A stretch of 64,000 nt of DNA from Dimorphilus gyrociliatus (Eukaryota; Animalia; Annelida), in the NCBI GenBank assembly GCA_904063045.1, contig CAJFCJ010000014.1, positions 1,485,643 to 1,549,642 on the forward strand, in the 5' to 3' direction. The notes under the pieces were generated by a model. It was not told the DNA's origin. It saw only the letters and a program-made list of their open reading frames with translations, and did not search any database. Each line of letters begins with the position of its first letter. Within the stretch, counting starts at the first letter, position 1. This document shows, one piece after another, positions 50,154-61,531 of the stretch. The position numbers were made by a program, and so were the translations under genes.

Positions 50154-51536
50154 ATGGCTGTCGAAATACACTTTAGATCCGATTCTACCTTATTAAGGAA
50201 TCTGCCTGCTTCACAGCTGCCATGTATAGGGAGGATAACCCGTGGTCATTATTCTCATATCGGAGCTTCGAAAAATAGCGAAAGAGATCTTTATATTTAT
50301 AATATTTACGAAGGTGATGCCATTTTGGCTGAGGTTAATCGTGATGATGTACAAATATCGATACCGAAGGCCTATCGCGGCTTTTTTGAAGTGTTAAATG
50401 CTGAAGGATTATCGACTAGCACGACTGTGGTAGGCGTACGACAATTGGCAAAAATTTTTCCAAAAACAGCTCTAGTGAGGCAGCAAGTTTGTGCTTTAGT
50501 TTATTCGATTTCCCAATCGGGTCAACTGGTCCTTAATAAGCAACGTTATCTGGCAGGGGGTGAAATAATTAAATTAATGGCCCTTCTCAAAGTCAAGGCT
50601 GGATCAACTGGAAAAAATCACGAATTAATTAAAGTTCAAACGAAAAATAAAGAGACGCTTTTTCTATCAGTTAAAGATAATAATGGTATATTTAGTCCAA
50701 TAGCTGAAAATGCCGATGAGGCGGGTGTCTATTCAATCTCATCGTTAATAGACCACTATAGATTTCCGCTAAATGTCCGACTAGTCCATGGCGTAGTACC
50801 ATCTAATTTGGAATCGTTTAATGGGACGATGACCCTTGTACGCTCCTATAAAGATGAAGAAATTATAGCTTGTGATTTCAATGGCCAAGCTCTTTCAATA
50901 CCTAAGAATGAGGCTTTGCGCCTTATATTTTCTACAAATATAGACAAACCAGATATTTTGTTTCCCGAATTGGCTAATAAGTGCAAACGCATGTTTAATT
51001 ATTTTGATAAATCAATGCATTTCCTCAGACATCCGCCGGAAGAAAAATCCTTCTATAAGGAAGCAGAATTTATAGACGATTCATTGAGTGAACACATTCT
51101 GGAGGAAATTGATGAACTCTACATGCACGTTCGAACCGGTGAACCTATAAAGAAACTTAAGAAAAGGAAACAGAACGGTCATGTAGAAAACAACGTAAAC
51201 AAAGAATTTCCTTTTGAGAGACCTGAACACGAGTATGAAACTTTACCCGATCCAGTGGTTATAAACGATCCCGAAGTAGAAAAAGTATTAGGTAGCGATT
51301 TGAAACTCTCGGAATCTGAAGAATGTCCCATTATTAATCAAGATACAGTAATAGAAGGGACGATAGAGCTACCCCGTAGACCTAGTGAAGATTATGAGTC
51401 ACGCAATCCAGTTCAAACACCTGCGCACAAAGACTTACCGGAACTTAAACAAACCGACGTTGTCAGCTTGCGCCAAGCAATAAAGAATAGAAAAACCGGA
51501 CTCTCATCCTCTCTTTTATCTAATGAGGATAATTAA
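50154..51536 (+). CDS. CABIT-domain signalling adaptor (GAREM/THEMIS/serrano family), single coding exon, 460 aa
   Basis: The N-terminal half follows the GAREM CABIT motif order: LPCIGRI..G, ISIPKAYRGFFEVL, VRQLAKIFPK, LAGGEIIKLM, GIFS, YSISSLIDHYRFPLNVRL. The C-terminal half is acidic and disordered, with Tyr motifs and LPRRPS. No SAM domain was seen. Confidence 0.75.
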   Translation: MAVEIHFRSDSTLLRNLPASQLPCIGRITRGHYSHIGASKNSERDLYIYNIYEGDAILAEVNRDDVQISIPKAYRGFFEVLNAEGLSTSTTVVGVRQLAKIFPKTALVRQQVCALVYSISQSGQLVLNKQRYLAGGEIIKLMALLKVKAGSTGKNHELIKVQTKNKETLFLSVKDNNGIFSPIAENADEAGVYSISSLIDHYRFPLNVRLVHGVVPSNLESFNGTMTLVRSYKDEEIIACDFNGQALSIPKNEALRLIFSTNIDKPDILFPELANKCKRMFNYFDKSMHFLRHPPEEKSFYKEAEFIDDSLSEHILEEIDELYMHVRTGEPIKKLKKRKQNGHVENNVNKEFPFERPEHEYETLPDPVVINDPEVEKVLGSDLKLSESEECPIINQDTVIEGTIELPRRPSEDYESRNPVQTPAHKDLPELKQTDVVSLRQAIKNRKTGLSSSLLSNEDN

Positions 51537-54079
51537 TCCGTCTCTTCATTTTTCTTTCTTAATTCTTTATCAATAGCTATAGCTTTCAAACGAAAGAAAG
51601 AGAAAAGCAAACAAACCTCAAGGCTAAATATTTACGGGTAATGAATACATCATTCGTACCTTATAAAAAAGAGACTAATTTGCATTCAACTCATGCTGAC
51701 ATCTATCGGAAAGATAATTATTTGGGCGTACTTGAACAATTGCATTATACGTTAATGTAAAGAGAGTAATAGAATCCTTGTTAACACACGTAACCCTATC
51801 CTTGAATCGGACATGCCACAGCCTCAATTAACTAACGGTAAACACGTTCTAGACGTCTCTTGTAACCTGACCTCCTAATTAGGGACGCTTACGTAATTTG
51901 CTTTCGCGTCTAAATGGGCAGATGTAGTGGACGGTGTTCGTAATTATTCTCTTTGACGAAAAACTGGCGGTGACAGGTAGTTTGTCAAATCCCTATCCCC
52001 TTTCAACTTCTTGGCCTAAGATATCCTTTTATCCGTTTAAAGGGCCTAAGATAGAGAAAATTGAAAGATCTTACGCACTCTTTAGTGCAGTTGGCAAAGT
52101 CTTTAAAGAGAGTCTAAAAAAAGAGAAAATGAGAAGAACAAGGTATTCGAAGAGATGAAGGGAAAAGTATAAGAGAGATATAGAGAATGGAAAAGAGAAA
52201 AAGTAAAGAAAATTGTAAAGAACAGATAGAAGCTAACTTTGAGCCCAGGGCAAAGAGAATATTTACGCTTGTAAAAAGTAAAAACCGTTAAGTTTTAAAC
52301 AGAAAGGGCGGTTATATAGTTTTTCGTTTGTCAGGTGGCTGAGTGGGAATTTCGATTAGGGGAGCGATAATTCGAAATCGGCACCTGCGTAAGAGCTTAC
52401 GTTCCCCGGTGCGGGGCAGGGAGGAAGTTTGTATATTTATTCCCGCTTAGATGTCGGCTGCCGGAGCGGCGGGCGAATAATTGCCCTGTTTTATAATCAG
52501 ACACGGAAGTAAACAGCTTTAACTCGTTTTGACAAACCAGTTCCCTCATCAATTCAACTTAGTGTAGACGAGGAAGGGAATGTAAAGAAAATAGAATGAA
52601 AGGGAGGAGTCAAACGTATTTCTAGTACAATTTCCATCCCCCTTCGCCTATATCTACCATCCCTATGCTGACGGGACGACGCAGCTGGCGCCATAAAACA
52701 CTCGTTAAGTGTCAGGAATAAAAACACAGATGGGTCTAATGACTGACGATGTGTTCATTAGGGATTTATACATCTACGGCTTAAGCCTATGTAGCTTACG
52801 GCTAACTCGAAGGTAGCGGCGTCTATTCTTTTGGTTTCCGTCGTCTGTGCGTAACGGGCTTCTTTAATCACCATCCTTAATCTGGGAATTATAGCGTAAA
52901 AAATGCACTGAGAGGTTGCCCGCCCTATTAAATCTTTTACTGAAATTAAGGAAAAATTTAATGTTCTCTATTCCCTTTCCACTCTTCTCACTCTTTCCCT
53001 CTTAAGTTGTGTTTAACACATCATCTACACTTGTAGAATAGGCCTATTTCTTGGGTAAGCGTGACGAAGGTTCGTTAGCAGAGGAATAGCTGATAATAGT
53101 AAGAAATTTTAAGGCGGAATTCGCGATCAATTAGGACATTCGTTAACCGTTGACTGAAAAGTCGCGTCAACGGCGTTTCCCGCTTTTCCTTTAGACGACG
53201 TGCAACAAATAGTAAAAAAGGAGAATTTGGCGTTAATTGCTCTAATATACTACCAGTTCAAAGGGTATAATAAAATCACGACAAAAGCAATAAATGCTTC
53301 AAACGCAATCGTGCAATTGTCTATATATCTAATCAATATACGAAACGAATTGCGACTACATTCGTACGGGTGTCACGTACTAGTAATTAAGCGTCGTTCG
53401 ACGTTTGTTTATTCATCTCATAGACATATGGAAAAATCGTTGATCTGAACTTTGACCCGCTTGTCGAGTTGACCGATATTAATCGGTTTTTTGTATACAT
53501 TTTCAATCAAACCGTATGTTTTTTTTTGGTCCAACGTGAATGACGTACAACTCAAAGGTGGAGAGTTACTAGGTTTTACAAATTTTACCCAGAAAAAGTT
53601 ATCTGTAAGAGAATAGAGTAATGCGTTTCCTTTTTATATTGTATGGTGGAGAGCCTCAGCCAATCCTTTTCCAGTTTAGTATATACGTTTGTTAATTATT
53701 CGCGCAGACCGCTATAAATTCCATGCTTACCACCTGCAAGCGGTCTGACGGATTTTCTGCCCGCGGTGCTATTGCAAGTTTAATGAAATGTTTGATTTCA
53801 CACTTTATCTGCACTCTTCTACGGAGAGCGGATAAATAGTATATTTCTTTTTCCGCTCCCGTCAACCAAATGATCTAACATTCAGAATCTTCTTGATCCG
53901 GCCTAATCTCATCTTTCATGTTCGTCTTAACCTAACTATCGTTTTTATCAAATGGATCATCTTTTTGGCTCCTTTTTGAAAACAGATTTTATTTTTATTT
54001 TTATAGAACTAAAGAAGAGGAAAGTTTGACGAAAGAACAATACTAAAACGAATTACTTAAGATAGCAAAGACTCAAGGA

Positions 54080-57000
54080 ATGGAGATGACAAACATAAAG
54101 TTAGGATTATGGACAGTCATCTTAACTTTCATCGCTGCTGTAAACGGTAAGTTTAGTATTAAAAAAAGCTAGTAGACGCCTCGTCTTTATTCTTTATAAA
54201 TACATACTGATCAACAATGAACGCTTATTTGCCTAAGTGATGGATGCCAGAATCGACTGCGTGGTCTTTGTAGAGTTTGTGGATATTGATGAGCGTTGAC
54301 ACAGGGTCAACCGTTCTTCGCATTTCTAGAGCGGAGATTTGTAAAATTCGCTACAAACTTTATCGTGATGAGTAATTGGGTTTGTCAAACGAATTTGGAT
54401 ATGTTTACATATTGTTATACGGAATATAGGCTACATTATGAACTGTATATAGGATTTACTCAAGCGCAAAAGCTGGCTAATCCAACATATAGTATAATCG
54501 CTATGGGATAGAGAGAAAGTAAAAAAAAGAAACAGAGTAGGGAAATGAGAGAAGAACGACTAAAAGAAATGCGGTAGATTATCTCAGTACAGTTGGCAAA
54601 TGAGTGCGAATGCGTAAAAATTCTCTTCCCGCCAAAAGAAACTTTATTTTACTTAGGGAATAGTTTTCTCCCCAGCTTGCCAAGGTTGAAGGTGGTAATG
54701 AGAGGGTAGCACTTAAACACGTAGTTGTTTTTTGTACATTGTAAGCAATATATAAGCCTAACAAATATGACTAAATATAAGTAATAACTAATGGAAAATA
54801 GAGAGGAGAATATGTTTTAAAGGGAAGGAAATTATTATAGAGAAAAATGAAGAAGGAGGTTACGGGATAAAGATAGAGAAAATTATAAGAACTCAAGTTC
54901 TGATGGGCGTCAAATTCTTGTCAGCATTCTCTTTTCCTTTCCTTATAATTTATATTACCGACGTATTTTTTTGCGTTAAGCCTCTCATATATGCTATTAT
55001 AATTATCTCATTCCAAGTTAAAATACACTACCGAAATTAAACGTCAACATTCTATTGAATAGAACCTCAGTATGTTTTTATTACAGCAAACAAAAAAAAG
55101 ACGTTTTTCTAGCTTATTAGTTTATTTATTGCCGGTCTATTGCCTACAACCCCCACTTACATTATACATGATATTTATCAAAACCTGTAATAAACACTTG
55201 ATCGCCTCTCCTCTTGTAGTTGTCAATTAAACTGAGAAAGGAAGGGGGAAGAGAAAGAGGAAAAAAGAAATCTAAAGAAGGGTAGGGTAGTAAGGGTTTA
55301 ATTTAAAAAAGAATAAAAAGGGCGTAAATAGTAGGTTTATGTGAAAACATCGTGTATCCAGTATAGATATATTTACATTTTGCAATCAATCTTAACATAT
55401 GTTTTATACTAAGGTTGCAGCTGGTAGATTTATGACTGCATGCGTTCGACATTCATTTCAAGTAAAACCAGCCCACCTTTTATCCTTGCTATATCTAATT
55501 ACGCAATAGTTATAGTAATAATTATTAATGACTGTTTGTTCTTCTTTCGATGTGGCAATACGTTATGATATTCGTAACAATAGAGAGGAAAATTAAAAAT
55601 TGATCAGGACTGATAGGTTGCTAATTGTGTCGCTCTTTTCTGCAGAAAAGAGATGCATAGGCCTAAAGGGAGGGAGAATAGTCGGCACGAAACAGTAAAG
55701 TGGAATGGGGGAAGGGAATTTATCGGTGGTTTGATAGTTTTTAAAAGAGGTTTTTTCACCCAAACCTTTTTACCGCCTCTCCGCACGACATTGTTATTAG
55801 ACGTTCTAAATTTGGGGCATTGAAAAGAGCGACGCCTCCGTCGCAGACTTTTTTCCCCCTATACTTCCTATCAGCCCGCCACTGCTATAAAAGCTTAGAA
55901 CGGGTAGCCCGGAAACCCAGGGCGTTGTTACGCCGCTGCAGGAGCAAGTGTAGAGTCGCGGCGGTCTCGTCATTACAGAATCTTCGTTCGTCATGAAAAC
56001 GACTGTTCTCTTTATTTGCTGTATTCTTTCAGCTCGATCGTCGTTACCAATCGTTCAGTCACCCGATATAGGAGAAACAGATAAAGTTGTAACTATATCT
56101 ACTATAAGGGTAAGTTATTCCTGCTTTTAATTTCCTTCTCATTTACTCATAATCATTCCCCTTCTCTCCCACTCTTTCCCGTTCGCCCTTCCTTCTTATC
56201 TCACCATCTCCATTCCTGTTTTCCCTTTATTTTATTTTTTCTTTCCAATTTCATTCTCTTATTTGCCTAAGAAATTCCTGTATACTTTCTACCTTTTTAC
56301 CAGTTTCGTCTCGTTTATTTATCTATCAGCTAACCGTAGGGATGAGAAACACGTGGAATTAGTTATTGAAAAATATGTAGGCGACGTTAAACTATTCACG
56401 GCACTTGTTTTTTCAATATCGAATTACTGGCAAACCGCTGCAAAAGTAATTTTAAAGTTTGTAGACAAAGATCAATTGCCTTTTATTAGAAACCGAGTGC
56501 GTAATCAATCACAGTTAGCGAATGGTTTTTAATTAGTAGCCGTCTCTCTGATTTCTCCCTTACTTTCTTACTTTTTAGTTTAAAGCCTATTACATTTTCA
56601 TTCAACTGTTAATAGTCATTTCGCTTCTTTGTATGTTTGTTAAGTTTGTACCATAAAAGGAATAATCCATACTATTTATATATAGCGTATACTGTATTTT
56701 GCTTTACATAAATATATATATATATATATATATATAACTGAACATTTCTCTAGGCAAGTGTTATTTTATTTAACGCGTATCTCATAACTTAAAAGAAAAT
56801 AGTTTCCCCTTCAGCTATATAAGTACTTCGCTTATAAAGGTTTCTGCAACGCGCATGATGTAGCGTTTCTTTTGTACTGCAACGTATTTCATACCTCTTC
56901 ACGAAATTTATATTATGTTTACATAGGGTTTTTTTTAATCAACCTGTTTTCCTCCCCCACAACCACATAACACTATGCATATAAGATCTCATTCTTCCCT

Positions 57001-60000
57001 TCCTCTCTTTTCTATTTCATCCTCCCGTTTCTTCTCATTTACCTCCTTCCTCTTCTCTTCTTTTCTACCCCTCTTCCCCTACAGTTTTCTCTCTTATGTT
57101 GTCAATATGAATGAAATATAATATATGAAACGATTGAGCATAAAAATTTCTCCTTATTTACTCAATCGAACAAACGAACAAAAGAGCAAACTGGAATTTT
57201 TTTATGTAGTAAAAGGAGGAAAAACTATACAAACTTTGGGGCACTTTTCACGCTCGACTGCAAAAAACTCACATCAATAGGATAGAGTTATTGTTTTTAA
57301 TTTGCCGGTCGCTTTGATGCTGCACGCTAACTGACCATTGGAATATAAATAGGCGTACTGCAGCGAAACACTGCAATTAATTTCGTCCGGCTGCCGCGAG
57401 ATAAACACGTGCAACAGGCGTTCCTGAAATCGGCTCATCATCTCTCAACCGACTCCTTTCCTTTCGTTCGATTACCCAATCGATCGTAATACTTAATGAT
57501 ATAATAGAAGAAATAGACAAAAAAATGATGGGTCAGAAAACTTGTCAAGATAAGACATCGTCACGCTAACCTGGCTAATTTCTACGTCGATTCGAATTTC
57601 GACGAATTTAATGCATTTCCCCTCATCTCAATTGATCAAAATCGTGACGCTTCAATATAATCCATCATATTACCCATCTTTTGTTCCTGTTGAACAAAAG
57701 AATTGACCTCGTTACACACTTGACTTGATGCTTCTTGGTGAGCGTTTTCTCCGAAGGCGTTTTCTGTCTATTTTTATTTAGTTGCCTCGCTTGTAATTAT
57801 CTTCGTCTGTCGTGAAAGAAGGAAAAAGTGACTACGAGGGGTAATGCATAGAAAGGCACGGATTATTAGCTGCCACTGTTTTACTCACGTTCAAGACACG
57901 CTCCCTTCAAGTGAAATCCTTTATCGTTTCCTATTTAATTGCCGGTGAAGGAAATGTTTGTAATAAAAAAATAGTTATGTCTAGTGAAAAACTCGGCAAA
58001 TAACATTTACTCCGCATCTAATTACATTCGTCTTATAAATTGGCCATCGTAGCGTACAGATAACTAATAGAATTCGCTCTTCCGCTTAGTTCGTGCGTCC
58101 TCCCCCTCTTCCTCTTCTCTTATTATCCCTAATACTGTAAATCGTTCAATTAGTAATTTAGACGCCGTATATTTACATTTATATACGCTATTGTATAATC
58201 TATAATACCGGATATATGCAGAGCGAACTTTTGTGGTTTTTTCATTACTCAGAGTGTGACATTTTGGCAGATCGTGCTAAGACCTTTTTATAATTGTTTC
58301 CTTGCCATATTGGACAAAGAAGATAAAAGGAAACATACCAGTGGGAAAATAAGTTCATAGAGTGAGACAGAAAATGAGAGAGACAGCGTAAAAGAGAAGG
58401 CGGCAGGGCGTGGTATGGGAGGGGGTAAGGGGATTGAGGTAAAGAGAATGACAGGAGGAGCGAAAAAGAAAGAAGAAAAACAAAAGAATGGTAACAGAGG
58501 AAGTCACCGTATATATCTAAATATATACTGAGTAAACAAAATGAAAGAATAAGGAAGGAAGAGGAGTAGACGTGAAAGAGCATAGAATGTCTTGTACAAG
58601 TATATTAAAAGCGGTTGGAGTTTTAAGATAGATGAATTTTGCCTTAAGTAATATACAAAGAAATCTAACAGTTGCAGTGAGACTGCAAATTAATGACTGC
58701 ACTTAGCAAACAATAAAAATACCGATATACAATCTATACAATGGTTAATATATATGGCGCCAAACTAGCGTGATGGCGAGCTTTCAATGCTCATTCAAAA
58801 TTTAAGATACCCTACCTTTTTGTTATTTATTCCATAAGTTGACCTTTATACTCCTCTCTTTTTCTAAACTTTCTCTCCCTCCTCTTTTTCTTTATATCCT
58901 TTTTATGCCCAATTTTTTGCATATTTTTCTTCCGGCAGATTGAGCCGTACGTCGTCATCCATAAGGAAATAAGGGATCACTATCGTTACGAAGGTTATAT
59001 TATTGATCTAGTTCGAGAGTTGTCTAGGGATTTGGGCTTCAAATTTAAAATATTTGAAGTAGAAGATGGTCAATTTGGCTTTCGTCATAATGGAAATTGG
59101 AATGGTATGATTGGAGAAGTTATAGGAAGAGTAAGTACTCAATCTTTCCCTCTCCCTCTTCTGTGAAAGGGCAATTTATTCTTGAACGGTTAAAACGGTT
59201 AGTTCAAAGAGTTTTGTAAGTGCTTGTTAAGAGCTCACACTAAATTAGACCCCAAATATATAATTCGATTTATGGTAATGAAATGAGGGTGGACTATTGA
59301 ATGAAGTAATAGGATACAGAAAATTGGGTAGGGGTGGTTTACATAAAATAAAGCTGCCTCAACTAACTTCCTTCCGACTAAATATACATGTTCTATTAAT
59401 GATTTAATAGAAAACTGTAGAGTTTTCATTTAGTACAAATTAAGGCGAAACTAACCGAGTTCCGCGATCCGACAATAACCTCGTTAGAAGGAAATTGCCT
59501 CCAGGTGGCGTTTATGCAAAAAAGAGGTACTCGCGATCCGCTCAGGACGTTACTTATAAGAAAAGGTGCTGCAATTCGCTGTATTAAGCGGCAGATGCGG
59601 CTGTTAATGGTTTTGGCTGTGGGCCGCATAAATTTTAAGTAAGCAGGGAAATACAAAAAGAAACCAGACCAAAAACAGCCACAAGTGGTGAATTTTAAAA
59701 AAACCGCTATCATTTGATTGGGACGGAAGCATTTCTACCCTGGAGACGCCCTCCAACTGCAATCGGCCGGTCGTGGACATGACCTTTAGCCTTGCGGCAT
59801 CAACCTTAGTCCACTATTTAGGCGTCATTCACTCACCATCTCGACCAAATGCTACCGCCCTAATTTCGTATTCTGTAGACTTCCGCTAAGATCCGAAAGG
59901 TTTAATTGAATTCGTTTTTCTCTTTTTCTCCTTTTTCTAGAGGGTCGATTTAGCGGCAGCTCCCCTCCTCATGACTAGACCTAGAATGAGAGCCATAGAC

Positions 60001-60609
60001 TTTACAGAACCATTCATGAAAGTTTACGCATCTGTGTTAATAAATAAACAAGCAAGCGAACTTATAAATGGCTACAAGGATTTATTAAATCATCCCCACT
60101 TTACATATGGAGTGCAAGCTAAAGGTGTTTTACGAAGAGCATTAAAGTTGTCAAATGATACAGATTTGTCAAGATTATGGAAGCAAATGTTAAGGTGGCA
60201 AGAAAGAGGTTTAAAATTCATATTTACAAAGAATAACGAAAGAGGTATCAAGAATGTAAGAATCGACGAAAGCTACGCCTTTATCCTCCCTTCACCAATT
60301 GCAGACTATATGCAACTTCAAATGCCTTGCAATTTAAAATCAGTTGATAAGTTCCTTATAAATATGGACTATGCTTTTGCTGCAAGAAAAAACTCTTCTT
60401 TAGTATCAAAAATAAATAAATCATTGAGAAAATTCAAGAAAAATGGATATTTAGATAGACTACGGAAAAAGTGGTGGGAAGATAGATCCCAATGCTCCTC
60501 AGCTAGAAGTATCAAGAGAGAAGTATTGGGATATAACGGGAAATCTACCGCTGTAAAGGGACATTTTTATTTAGTACTTCTACCTCCTTTACTATTATTA
60601 TTGTTATAG
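54080..60609 (+). CDS. Pore-less ionotropic glutamate receptor-like ligand-binding-domain protein (signal peptide, S1 fused to S2, hydrophobic C-tail); exons 54080-54146, 56033-56109, 58939-59130, 59941-60609 (334 aa); alternative start 55993 (325 aa)
   Basis: S1: KVVTISTIRIEPYV...YEGYIIDLVRELSRDLGF...DGQFG...WNGMIGEV...DLAAAPLLMTRPRMRAIDFTEPFM. It runs straight into S2: INGYKDLL...TYGV...SRLWKQM...YAFIL...MPCNL...YAFA...GYLDRLRKKWWEDRSQC. All splice junctions are GT-AG and phase-compatible. AATAAA lies at 60632-60637. Confidence 0.88.
55886..55893 (+). promoter_or_regulatory. TATA box of a putative internal promoter of the iGluR-LBD gene
   Basis: TATAAAAG in a GC-rich island, 107 nt upstream of the in-frame ATG at 55993. 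Confidence 0.45.
59498..59510 (+). promoter_or_regulatory. CTCF-like motif CCTCCAGGTGGCG
   Basis: Strong consensus match inside a GC-rich island in the last intron of the iGluR-LBD gene. Confidence 0.5.
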
Positions 60610-61531
60610 TGTATCATAACAGTCTAGAATTAATAAAAAGAAACGAAGAAGATAGGGGGATGAATGTATATAAAAGAAATATAAAATATATACATAACGA
60701 CTATATATATATATATATATATAAATGTATATGTATGCAGTATATACAGCATAAATGATGTATCTATAAAAGAAAACGAGTAAGAAAGAAAGGAAGAAGA
60801 AGAAAGAAAAGAAAGAAAGAAAAAAAAAAAAGACTGCAGATTACAATTCCATTATGCTCATTCTAACTGTCTTCTCTATTTGTTTGTATACTGAAATCAC
60901 CTTATTATATATTCATGGTCACATATTGTTTAAGCTTTTTTGTTCATGTAAATCATATAGTTGATAACTGTTTTTCTAGTTTATTCTAGCGATATCCATA
61001 CATATATATATATATATTACTAATATGTATTTATATGTATGCTATATCGTATAAAAATCCGCCTAATGATTTTATTCCTTCCCATTTGAATAGAGAAATA
61101 CCTTTGAAGTTTATTATATAAATCTTGTACATACAAAGATTCTAATAATATACATATATTATACGTAAAATATGTATATAAACAGTATATATACAAAGAT
61201 ATAGGTAACTATATTTGAAAGCCTATATACAATATATAGGCATATATTTATCTATTTTTTATGTACAACTTCTACTTCGTCGACCAATGAATTGTTAATA
61301 ACATTTTATATACATAAAAATATATATAATATTATTATACAATATTTATATATAATATATGCTATATATATATACAGTATGATAGATATGATTATGTTAT
61401 CAAAAAGAAGAAATACATACTTATATCATAAAACAAGATATATGAATCATACAATCAAAAAATTACATTCCTCTTGTGCAATAAGTCAAAACCTAACTTT
61501 GTCAAATACAATTATTAGTACCAATACAGCA

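What the first reader, a model, noticed from the sequence alone, without database searches (positions are those of the whole stretch)
54080..60609. A natural pore-less 'S1S2' glutamate-receptor ligand-binding protein
Seen in sequence: after a signal peptide, the protein has only the two iGluR clamshell segments. The end of S1 (DFTEPFMKVYASVLINK) runs through a few residues (QASEL, about 60049-60063) directly into the start of S2 (INGYKDLL...TYG). This junction lies inside one uninterrupted exon (59941-60609), so M1, the pore loop and M3 are physically absent rather than spliced out. There is no amino-terminal domain. The reading frame is intact, the splice sites are canonical, both LBD disulfide cysteines are kept (60328, 60493), and AATAAA follows 23 nt after the stop. 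Established knowledge: this mirrors the engineered GluA2 S1S2 construct (S1-GT-S2). Vertebrate kainate-binding proteins and most insect IRs lack the ATD but keep the pore. Molluscan AChBP is the precedent for a channel-free ligand-binding domain, but in the Cys-loop family. Inference: this may be an iGluR-family equivalent of AChBP, i.e. an extracellular ligand buffer, decoy, carrier or auxiliary sensor.
Basis: partly seen in the sequence, partly recalled or inferred. Interest (0 to 1): 0.92.

Follow-up and report, generated by a model that had tools for sequence, protein, structure and literature searches.

The report
Channel-less glutamate-receptor binding protein, membrane-tethered
This annelid gene makes only the ligand-binding clamshell of a glutamate-receptor channel, with no ion pore and a lipid-anchor-like tail; it is expressed, conserved, and belongs to a large annelid family I could not find described anywhere.

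Summary
The window is from Dimorphilus gyrociliatus. RNA contigs confirm a 4-exon gene (54080-54146, 56033-56109, 58939-59130, 59941-60609) encoding 334 aa: signal peptide, S1, a 4-residue linker (QASE), S2, and a 14-residue hydrophobic C-terminus. The S1-S2 junction lies inside exon 4. No M1-M3 coding sequence exists anywhere in the 64 kb.

A related dinophilid genome keeps the same four exons, with dN/dS 0.087. Exon 4 aligns in one stretch through the GT linker of engineered GluA2 S1S2 constructs. An AF2 model of the exon-4 part superposes on them at 1.7 Å.

- The tail aligns with the start of M4 and looks like a GPI-attachment signal. The protein is therefore probably membrane-tethered, not free like AChBP.
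- It is not a singleton. About 100 of the 150 best representative clusters are short, pore-less and mostly hydrophobic-tailed. Named members come from Capitella, Helobdella and Owenia. One well-supported tree branch (96/87) separates them from channel iGluRs.

The pocket keeps Arg485 and the disulfide but has lost the α-amino contacts (E705→P). Nine literature searches found no description. First-stage notes report two more pore-less paralogues elsewhere in this genome.

The parts
53600..53919 (+). Minor upstream non-coding leader exon, spliced 53919->54007 in a minority of transcripts
   Evidence: X10 contig with a GT..AG joint at depth 13.5, against 105 for the main form.
54007..54146 (+). 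Exon 1: 5'UTR plus the start codon at 54080 and the signal peptide (residues 1-22 and the first base of codon 23)
   Evidence: X10 contig covers 54007-54145/6 and joins to 56032/3 (GT..AG, depth 105). The n-h-c layout ends in VNA before RSS.
56033..56109 (+). Exon 2: mature N-terminus and the first S1 strand (...VVTISTIR)
   Evidence: Joints 54146|56033 and 56109|58939 in X10. The orthologue differs at one residue.
58939..59130 (+). Exon 3: core of S1 (lobe 1), including the Tyr450 equivalent at 58996-58998
   Evidence: Pfam Lig_chan-Glu_bd 4e-17. 63 of 64 residues are identical in the orthologue, dN/dS 0.018.
59941..60609 (+). Exon 4: end of S1, linker, all of S2, tail and stop codon
   Evidence: Uninterrupted ORF. 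SBP_bac_3 spans residues 1-179 of the exon. It aligns in a single stretch with GluA2/3 S1S2 constructs at about 1e-25. AF2 pLDDT is 90.7.
60049..60060 (+). Natural S1-S2 linker QASE, occupying the place of M1-pore-M3
   Evidence: It aligns opposite the engineered GT linker, with a 2-residue gap in the construct. An X10 cDNA contig and an X1 metatranscriptome contig both span it.
59983..59985 (+). Arg127, equivalent to GluA2 Arg485 (binds the ligand carboxylate); retained
   Evidence: Alignment to GluA2. Arg in 91 of 92 pore-less family members with a residue in that column.
60289..60291 (+). Pro229 in place of GluA2 Glu705 (α-amino contact). Leu122 (59968-59970) replaces T480, and Val175/Leu176 (60127-60132) replace S654/T655
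   Evidence: The signature L-R-V-L-P is typical of the 'P-type' subfamily (Pro in 62 of 114).
60328..60330 (+). Cys242, equivalent to GluA2 Cys718 (first half of the LBD disulfide)
   Evidence: Cys in 114 of 114 short family members.
60493..60495 (+). Cys297, equivalent to GluA2 Cys773 (second half of the disulfide)
   Evidence: Cys in 110 of 111 members with a residue in that column.
60565..60606 (+). C-terminal hydrophobic peptide FYLVLLPPLLLLLL. It is a remnant of the start of M4 and a probable GPI-attachment signal, with candidate omega sites G312 and S314
   Evidence: It aligns with the start of M4 in 8i0b_A. No residues follow it. 95 of 110 family members have such a tail, against M4 plus 50-330 further residues in channels.
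60632..60637 (+). AATAAA, 22 nt after the stop
   Evidence: Sequence. RNA coverage continues to at least 60693, so its use is not proven.
55993..56032 (+). In-frame ATG-initiated extension of exon 2 (MKTTVLFICCILS) that would give an alternative signal peptide; possibly an alternative first exon
   Evidence: The ORF runs into exon 2. 12 of 13 residues and 90% of bases are conserved in the orthologue. There is no RNA cover in X10.

Best explanation
Shown:
- A transcribed, spliced gene of the annelid Dimorphilus gyrociliatus, under purifying selection, encodes a 334-aa secretory-pathway protein.
- The protein consists of an AMPA-receptor-like ligand-binding clamshell only: S1, a 4-residue linker and S2. 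The ATD, M1, the pore loop, M3 and the cytoplasmic tail are absent.
- Only the first ~14 residues of M4 remain, at the extreme C-terminus.
- It belongs to a large family with the same architecture, which a single tree branch separates from channel iGluRs.

Inferred:
- The signal peptide is cleaved after Ala23.
- The hydrophobic C-terminal peptide is exchanged for a GPI anchor. Less likely, it serves as a short membrane stub. Either way the clamshell sits on the outer face of the cell membrane.
- The cleft keeps the carboxylate-binding Arg and the lobe-2 disulfide, but hydrophobic residues and a Pro replace the α-amino contacts. It therefore probably closes on a carboxylate-bearing ligand that is not an α-amino acid.
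- With no pore and no cytoplasmic part, it must act through partners. It could work as a ligand-presenting co-receptor or sensor subunit (in the way GFRα-type GPI co-receptors work), or as a local modulator of ligand access.
For: Gene model and transcription:
- Three GT..AG junctions are seen in cDNA contigs at depths of 105-174.
- The CDS is 1005 nt, intact, 334 aa.

Pore absence:
- The junction lies inside one exon.
- There is no PF00060 hit.
- A hydropathy scan finds no internal hydrophobic segment.
- tblastn finds no M1-M3 anywhere in the window.

Selection:
- The orthologue in L001 keeps all four exons and splice sites.
- dN/dS is 0.087 over 325 codons (dS 0.68). The neighbouring gene gives dS 0.74.

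LBD identity:
- Exon 4 aligns in a single stretch with S1S2 constructs at 1.7e-25.
- The AF2 model has pLDDT 90.7 and pTM 0.80.
- Foldseek puts GluA2 S1S2J first, at E 1.3e-17 and rmsd 1.7 Å over 195 columns.

Family:
- About 100 of the top 150 representative clusters are short single-stretch matches.
- Named members come from Capitella, Helobdella and Owenia.
- An Atlas cluster of 147 members is 'commonest Annelida'.
- Pore-less and channel proteins form one bipartition, 96/87.

Tail:
- It is homologous to the start of M4.
- 95 of 110 family members end in a hydrophobic peptide, mostly 0-7 residues from the C-terminus, with a median uncharged stretch of 15 aa.

Pocket:
- Arg in 91 of 92 members; the window protein reads L-R-V-L-P at positions 480/485/654/655/705.
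- An N-x-S/T sequon in S2 is conserved in the subfamily.
Against: - No dedicated signal-peptide or GPI predictor was available. Both calls rest on layout heuristics.
- No ligand, partner, cell type or localisation is known.
- The hydrophobic pocket could mean loss of ligand binding rather than retuning.
- Non-coding DNA around the gene is less diverged than synonymous sites (0.12 against 0.30 per site). dS may therefore overstate the neutral rate. Even against the non-coding rate, dN is only about 0.4 of neutral.
- Transcription is shown in one organism-specific run plus one metatranscriptome contig.
Confidence: 0.6

Rival explanations
1. A freely secreted, soluble ligand buffer or decoy, the iGluR counterpart of molluscan/annelid AChBP.
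For: It has the same logic of a channel-free binding domain. A few family members do lack any hydrophobic tail and would be soluble: P0093 of Owenia, which ends in a His-rich peptide, and P0101, P0113, P0148, P0018 and P0006. GPI proteins can also be shed.
Against: This protein and 95 of 110 relatives end in a hydrophobic peptide. The tail is under constraint between the two dinophilids (dN/dS 0.12). The pocket lacks the α-amino contacts, so it would not buffer glutamate.
Confidence: 0.15
2. A single-pass pseudo-subunit. The tail is a real, short M4-like helix that packs against M1/M3 of true iGluR subunits, and the LBD joins or caps the LBD layer, modulating native AMPA-type channels.
For: The tail aligns with the start of M4 (VKGHFYLVL against VAGVFYILV). 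In established iGluR biology, M4 contacts the neighbouring subunit and is needed for assembly. The closest full-length relatives are AMPA-type.
Against: - Only 14 hydrophobic residues with two central prolines, too short for a bilayer-spanning helix.
- No flanking basic cytoplasmic residues.
- Tail sequences are not conserved across the family beyond hydrophobicity. That fits a GPI signal better than a specific helix-packing interface.
Confidence: 0.15
3. A ligand-independent adhesion or scaffold protein that uses the clamshell only as a protein-interaction module, as GluD receptors act in trans-synaptic complexes.
For: Four of the five canonical ligand contacts are replaced by hydrophobic residues or Pro. 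The AF2 model fits open-cleft (antagonist-bound or apo) GluA2 structures best, at 1.7-1.9 Å, against 2.6-2.8 Å for glutamate-bound forms.
Against: The carboxylate-binding Arg is nearly invariant across the family (91 of 92) and Tyr732 is kept, which argues that the cleft is still used. The replacement residues are themselves conserved as a class within the subfamily.
Confidence: 0.08
4. A decaying relic of a channel gene with an internal deletion, or an assembly collapse at the junction.
For: None beyond the unusual architecture. The public annotation is truncated.
Against: - dN/dS is 0.087, with intact frames in two genomes.
- Spliced RNA is seen at high depth.
- cDNA contigs from two independent libraries cross the junction.
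- The same junction is present in about 100 representative clusters.
Confidence: 0.02

Closest known systems
Engineered GluA2/GluA3 S1S2 ligand-binding cores (S1-GT-S2 constructs; e.g. PDB 1ftj, 1lb9, 3lsw)
   Same: S1 is joined to S2 by a very short linker in place of M1-M3. Exon 4 aligns in one stretch through the linker at about 30-35% identity, with rmsd 1.7 Å over 195 columns. The disulfide, Arg485, Tyr450 and Tyr732 are kept.
   Different: The protein here is natural, spliced and under selection. The linker is QASE rather than GT. It has its own signal peptide and a hydrophobic tail derived from M4. The α-amino contacts are lost (T480L, S654V, T655L, E705P).
AMPA-type ionotropic glutamate receptors (closest full-length relatives, e.g. 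'glutamate receptor 2/3/4-like' of Styela, Pecten, Octopus, Tubulanus, Asterias)
   Same: The LBD sequence and fold match, and these are the best full-length hits.
   Different: No ATD, no M1-M3 with SYTANLAAF, no full M4 and no cytoplasmic tail. One tree branch (96/87) separates the pore-less proteins from these channels.
Vertebrate kainate-binding proteins and insect/protostome IRs
   Same: The ATD is lost. IR-like pockets are also divergent, often keeping only the Arg (established knowledge; Croset et al. 2010, PMC2924276).
   Different: Both of those keep the ion-channel domain. This family does not.
Acetylcholine-binding protein (AChBP) of molluscs and Capitella
   Same: The ligand-binding domain of a ligand-gated channel family is released from its channel, and it occurs in lophotrochozoans (established knowledge).
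   Different: AChBP belongs to an unrelated fold family (Cys-loop). It is a soluble pentamer, whereas this protein carries a membrane-anchor-type tail.
SmGBP, the truncated metabotropic glutamate receptor of Schistosoma mansoni (PMC3206071)
   Same: A natural glutamate-receptor ligand-binding module that lacks the membrane-spanning signalling part (abstract seen).
   Different: It is the Venus-flytrap of a class C GPCR, not an iGluR S1S2 domain.
Bacterial periplasmic amino-acid-binding proteins (SBP_bac_3, e.g. GlnH)
   Same: The same type II periplasmic-binding fold, free of a pore. Pfam SBP_bac_3 matches and the Atlas gives structural matches of TM 0.56-0.57 by query for the Helobdella homologue.
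   Different: The protein here derives secondarily from animal iGluRs. Animal AMPA LBDs score far better, and it has the iGluR disulfide, the KWW motif and an M4 remnant. The gene has spliceosomal introns.

Membership tests
iGluR ligand-binding domain (S1S2 clamshell) | Sequence match to Lig_chan-Glu_bd / SBP_bac_3 profiles | tested here: met
   Lig_chan-Glu_bd scores 4e-17 on exon 3. SBP_bac_3 scores 7.9e-11 across exon 4.
iGluR ligand-binding domain (S1S2 clamshell) | Two-lobed fold that superposes on solved iGluR LBDs | tested here: met
   The AF2 model of residues 105-334 has pLDDT 90.7. GluA2 S1S2J is the top Foldseek match at rmsd 1.7 Å over 195 columns and TM 0.77. The N-terminal two thirds of lobe 1 were not modelled.
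iGluR ligand-binding domain (S1S2 clamshell) | Conserved lobe-2 disulfide (GluA2 C718-C773) and carboxylate-binding Arg485 | tested here: met
   C242, C297 and R127 are present, and all three are near-invariant in the family.
iGluR ligand-binding domain (S1S2 clamshell) | α-amino-acid recognition set (T480, S654/T655, E705) | tested here: not met
   The residues are L, V, L and P in this protein. About 40% of the family keeps T-R-x-T-E.
Ionotropic glutamate receptor (ligand-gated channel) | M1, pore loop and M3 with the SYTANLAAF gate (Pfam Lig_chan PF00060) | tested here: not met
   There is no PF00060 hit and no internal hydrophobic segment. No M1-M3 similarity exists anywhere in the window, while the S2 positive controls are found. 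The junction is inside one exon.
Ionotropic glutamate receptor (ligand-gated channel) | Full M4 helix followed by a cytoplasmic C-terminal domain | tested here: not met
   Only 14 hydrophobic residues remain, followed directly by the stop. The sampled channels have 80-331 residues after Cys773.
GPI-anchored surface proteins | N-terminal signal peptide | tested here: inconclusive
   The layout is typical: a Lys in the n-region, a 14-residue hydrophobic core, and VNA before RSS. The orthologue has the same layout. No dedicated predictor was available.
GPI-anchored surface proteins | C-terminal signal: small omega-site residues, a 6-10 residue polar spacer, and a hydrophobic end with no cytoplasmic residues | tested here: inconclusive
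   G312-K-S or S314-T-A, then a spacer, then 14 hydrophobic residues to the stop. The architecture is shared by 95 of 110 relatives. NetGPI and PredGPI were not available.
GPI-anchored surface proteins | Release by PI-PLC, or a lipid-modified C-terminus | not testable with these tools
   This needs biochemistry.
AChBP-like soluble decoy | Secreted with no membrane anchor | tested here: not met
   A hydrophobic C-terminal peptide is present. Only a minority of relatives lack it.

The most novel reading that the evidence does not exclude
Annelids carry a sizeable, so far undescribed family of GPI-anchored, channel-less iGluR ligand-binding domains. The family arose once from an AMPA/kainate-like receptor, by loss of M1-M3 and truncation of M4.

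It has two branches. One keeps a canonical amino-acid pocket. The other, which includes this gene, is retuned to non-amino-acid carboxylates.

These proteins would work as surface ligand sensors or co-receptors that signal through partner proteins. That would be a third mode of glutamate-receptor-family signalling, beside ionotropic and metabotropic, and a natural source of stable S1S2 domains.
Probability: 0.4. Interest if true: 0.88.

Novelty: new variant of a known kind. Interest (0 to 1): 0.8.

Why it matters
- **A natural version of a laboratory device.** iGluR ligand-binding domains have been studied for 25 years as artificial S1S2 constructs. Here nature has made the same construct and kept it under selection in an entire phylum. 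This shows that the clamshell has a pore-independent function.
- **An experimental opening.** It gives the iGluR field what AChBP gave the nicotinic field: naturally stable, probably easily expressed binding domains with varied pockets. It also poses a concrete question about how a pore-less, tail-less binding domain signals.
- **A blind spot in surveys.** iGluR surveys that require the pore motif have been filtering this family out. Ramos-Vicente et al. 2018 dropped sequences with fewer than four conserved SYTANLAAF residues.

Tried and rejected
- **Word-indexed protein search.** It found only the annotated protein and one orthologue with exon 4. With a 20-sequence profile it found 13 hits. 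The exhaustive representative search was needed to see the family.
- **Taxonomic range beyond Annelida.** This could not be settled. Most family members are unnamed Logan or JGI contigs. The Atlas gave 'commonest Annelida' for only one cluster.
- **RNA runs.** Only X10 (100% identical) and one contig of X1 carry the mRNA. The coral metatranscriptomes X2 and X6 hold a relative's intron-like sequence, not exon 4.
- **The ATG at 55993 as the true start.** Rejected for the main transcript, because X10 splices exon 1 into 56033 and does not cover 55862-56031.
- **Full-length structure prediction.** Not possible, because the spliced protein has no reference. Only residues 105-334 were modelled.
- **Rfam scan of 53000-61000.** No match.
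- **Conserved intron blocks as repeats.** Rejected, because they are single-copy in the window.
- **Literature.** Nine full-text searches found no description of a pore-less iGluR LBD family. A hit in the Aculops genome paper turned out to concern nuclear receptors.
- **Bacterial SBP acquired by transfer.** Rejected, because the gene has introns, animal AMPA LBDs are the best matches, and the iGluR disulfide and an M4 remnant are present.
Full report
**Source and gene model.** The translation of exon 4 is 100% identical to DgyrCDS10010 of the annelid Dimorphilus gyrociliatus. That annotation (230 aa) starts at an internal Met in exon 3 and is incomplete.

Logan contigs of run X10 are all at least 99% identical to the window. 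Their depth is 105-174 on exons and 5-28 on introns. They carry three GT..AG joints: 54145/6 to 56032/3, 56108/9 to 58938/9, and 59130 to 59941.

The coding exons are therefore 54080-54146, 56033-56109, 58939-59130 and 59941-60609. Together they make 1005 nt and 334 codons. Exon 1 begins at or before 54007. A minor form adds an upstream leader exon ending at 53919.

**The observation.** Exon 3 matches Pfam Lig_chan-Glu_bd (4e-17). Exon 4 matches SBP_bac_3 over residues 1-179, and no Lig_chan channel domain is found.

Inside exon 4 the last S1 strand ends at K148. Four residues (QASE, 60049-60060) lead straight into S2. One X10 cDNA contig of 678 nt runs from exon 3 across this junction without a mismatch. 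A 256-nt contig from an unrelated marine metatranscriptome (X1) also spans it. Assembly collapse is therefore excluded.

A hydropathy scan finds hydrophobic segments only at the two ends of the protein. tblastn with the M1-M3 region of five AMPA-type channels finds nothing in the 64-kb window (best E 1.9). The S2 regions of the same proteins hit exon 4 at 1e-13 to 1e-19. No paralogue lies in the window. The flanking genes are a CABIT-domain gene and an APH-like ORF.

**Selection.** A Logan genomic contig from another sample (L001) is collinear with window 50390-60984 at about 85% identity. It keeps all four exons, the same splice sites and an intact 334-codon frame.

Nei-Gojobori dN/dS over 325 codons is 0.087 (dN 0.059, dS 0.68). 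By region it is 0.018 for exon 3, 0.10 for linker plus S2, and 0.12 for the tail. The neighbouring CABIT gene gives dS 0.74 and ω 0.116, so the synonymous distance is not peculiar to this gene. The signal-peptide exon evolves fast (48% aa identity) but keeps its start codon, hydrophobic core, VNA end and donor site.

**Comparison with engineered S1S2 constructs.** phmmer against PDB sequences aligns exon 4 in one stretch with GluA2/3/4 S1S2 constructs (best 1.7e-25). The natural KQASELI lies opposite the engineered KKGT--PI.

The best hit (8i0b_A) retains the start of M4. There the tail VKGHFYLVL aligns with VAGVFYILV, so the C-terminal hydrophobic peptide is an M4 remnant.

An AlphaFold2 model of residues 105-334, built on an 85-sequence family alignment, has mean pLDDT 90.7 and pTM 0.80. 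Foldseek against the PDB puts GluA2 S1S2J structures first (E 1.3e-17). The rmsd is 1.7-1.9 Å over 195 columns for antagonist-bound or apo forms, and 2.6-2.8 Å for glutamate-bound forms.

**Pocket.** The alignment to GluA2 and a profile alignment numbered on a GluA3 construct agree on the following. Kept: Tyr450, Pro478, Arg485 (R127), Tyr732 and both disulfide cysteines. Replaced:

| GluA2 residue | Residue here |
|---|---|
| Thr480 | Leu |
| Ser654 | Val |
| Thr655 | Leu |
| Glu705 | Pro |

This confirms the earlier first-reader note s1-083636.

**The family.** An exhaustive phmmer search of 1.84 billion representatives gave 1407 hits at E ≤ 0.001. About 100 of the best 150 are 130-373 aa long. 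Each matches in a single stretch through the S1-S2 junction, and they score above every full-length iGluR; the first of those is at 3.7e-31.

Full-length examples share one layout: signal peptide, S1, a 7-15-residue linker, S2, the second Cys, a short spacer, and a hydrophobic end. Many of the shorter entries are last-exon ORFs called on genomic contigs, which shows that the junction-bearing exon is conserved.

Named members are:
- Capitella teleta ELT90099.1
- Helobdella robusta ESO10626.1
- an unnamed Owenia fusiformis protein, P0078
- Owenia fusiformis CAH1779393.1

The databases label all of them hypothetical or domain-containing proteins. An ESM-Atlas cluster of 147 members (226 aa) is 'commonest Annelida'. 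Owenia belongs to the earliest-branching annelid lineage (established knowledge), so the family probably predates the annelid crown group. Its presence in other phyla is undetermined.

**Family-wide residue and tail statistics** (114 short representatives):
- Arg485 is kept in 91 of 92 members with a residue in that column.
- The two cysteines are kept in 114 of 114 and 110 of 111.
- Position 705 is Pro in 62, Glu in 36 and Asp in 12.

There are thus two pocket classes. One is canonical, T-R-x-T-E. The other is hydrophobic, [YFL]-R-[VIL]-[ILM]-P, and includes the window protein.

Of the 110 short representatives with the second Cys aligned, 95 have a strongly hydrophobic C-terminal window, which mostly ends 0-7 residues before the stop. 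The median uncharged stretch is 15 aa. Six that are not obviously cut short lack any hydrophobic tail and would be soluble. Channels instead have a 21-25-residue M4 followed by tens to hundreds of residues.

**Tree.** A careful IQ-TREE on 272 profile-aligned LBD columns was run with the engineered construct removed. One branch (UFBoot 96, SH-aLRT 87) separates all 33 pore-less proteins from all 23 channel proteins. 96% of bootstrap trees need only one change.

The window protein and its orthologue sit in a 98/93 clade of 11 P-type proteins with the Capitella member. The closest full-length proteins carry AMPA-type names from Styela, Pecten, Octopus, Tubulanus and Asterias.

There is a caveat. 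The channel sample holds only the best-scoring channels, with no NMDA, delta or epsilon outgroup. A single origin is therefore supported but not proven.

**Mechanism.**

*Shown:* the protein is a pore-less, ATD-less clamshell made through the secretory route. Its gene is transcribed and under purifying selection, and it is one of many proteins with this architecture.

*Inferred:*
- The signal peptide is cleaved after VNA.
- The tail has small residues at G312-K-S or S314-T-A, a polar spacer, and 14 hydrophobic residues with two prolines, followed directly by the stop. That is the layout of a GPI-attachment signal. It is too short and proline-rich for a stable transmembrane helix.
- Across the family the tail is conserved only in hydrophobicity, as expected for a GPI signal rather than a helix-packing interface.
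- A conserved N-x-S/T sequon in S2 of the P-type subfamily fits an extracellular location.
- With the Arg kept and the α-amino contacts replaced by conserved hydrophobic residues, the likeliest ligand is a carboxylate that is not an α-amino acid.
- Having no pore or cytoplasmic part, the protein must act through partners or by controlling ligand access.

I put membrane tethering by GPI at about 0.6 and a short membrane stub at about 0.25.

**Novelty.** Nine full-text searches found no paper describing a channel-less iGluR LBD family. The D. gyrociliatus genome paper mentions glutamate receptors only as class C GPCRs.

The main metazoan iGluR phylogeny excluded sequences lacking the SYTANLAAF motif. 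That explains how the family could be overlooked. The closest described analogue is SmGBP, a truncated metabotropic receptor of Schistosoma.

First-stage notes of this scan report two further pore-less paralogues elsewhere in this genome (s1-080359, s1-080358). I did not test them.

**Caveat on rates.** Non-coding DNA across the syntenic 10 kb is less diverged than synonymous sites. It shows 0.118-0.125 substitutions per aligned site, against 0.30 at third codon positions. Single-copy blocks of 94-197 nt are perfectly identical. This is unexplained.

It does not weaken the within-exon contrast, where synonymous changes are 11-fold more frequent than non-synonymous ones. It does mean that dS may exceed the local neutral rate.

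Noticed in passing
window 51537-60609 vs L001: Introns and intergenic DNA are about 2.4-fold less diverged than third codon positions (0.12 against 0.30 substitutions per site; pS 0.45-0.47 in two genes). Single-copy blocks are perfectly identical at 57245-57441 (197 nt), 56331-56512 (182), 58225-58357 (133), 54204-54329 (126) and 53725-53818 (94). There is no Rfam match. Possibly dense regulatory elements kept in the long introns of a compact genome.
   Followed up: partly
window 55993-56032: An ATG-initiated ORF (MKTTVLFICCILS) reads in frame into exon 2 and would supply a second, different signal peptide. 12 of 13 residues are conserved in the orthologue, and the 93 nt upstream are 93.5% identical. 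It is not covered by RNA in X10. It may be an alternative first exon used in another stage or sex.
   Followed up: partly
window 59107-60609 (DgyrCDS10010): The public gene model (230 aa) starts at an internal Met of exon 3. It misses exons 1-2 and most of exon 3, so the signal peptide and most of S1 are absent from the annotation.
   Followed up: yes
window 53600-54007: A minor transcript form joins 53919 to 54007 (GT..AG, depth 13.5 against 105). It is either an upstream leader exon or read-through from the CABIT gene's 3' region.
   Followed up: no
window 55900-59670 (runs X2, X6): Coral and aquarium metatranscriptome runs hold contigs 93-96% identical to the introns and exon 3 of this gene, but none on exon 4. 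A related dinophilid seems to be present in those samples, and the contigs look like DNA or pre-mRNA.
   Followed up: no
ESM Atlas clusters: Two clusters of giant-virus (Nucleocytoviricota) proteins carry SBP_bac_3 plus Lig_chan-Glu_bd without a channel domain. They are 337 and 372 aa long, with 203 and 114 members. The feature score is only 0.83-0.84, so this is a lead only.
   Followed up: no
P0093 (Owenia fusiformis CAH1779393.1), P0101, P0113, P0148: A few family members have a signal peptide but no hydrophobic tail. One ends in a His/Asp-rich peptide. These would be truly soluble S1S2 proteins.
   Followed up: partly
P0044 (Lineus longissimus XP_064648822.1, 989 aa): An uncharacterised nemertean protein matches the query in four stretches and has eight hydrophobic segments. 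It may be a tandem or fused iGluR-like gene model.
   Followed up: no
window 59094-59125 (run X6): A 2581-nt contig at depth 59 matches only 32 nt at the end of exon 3 and continues as a different S1-like sequence. It comes from a paralogue or a channel iGluR of the organism in that run.
   Followed up: no
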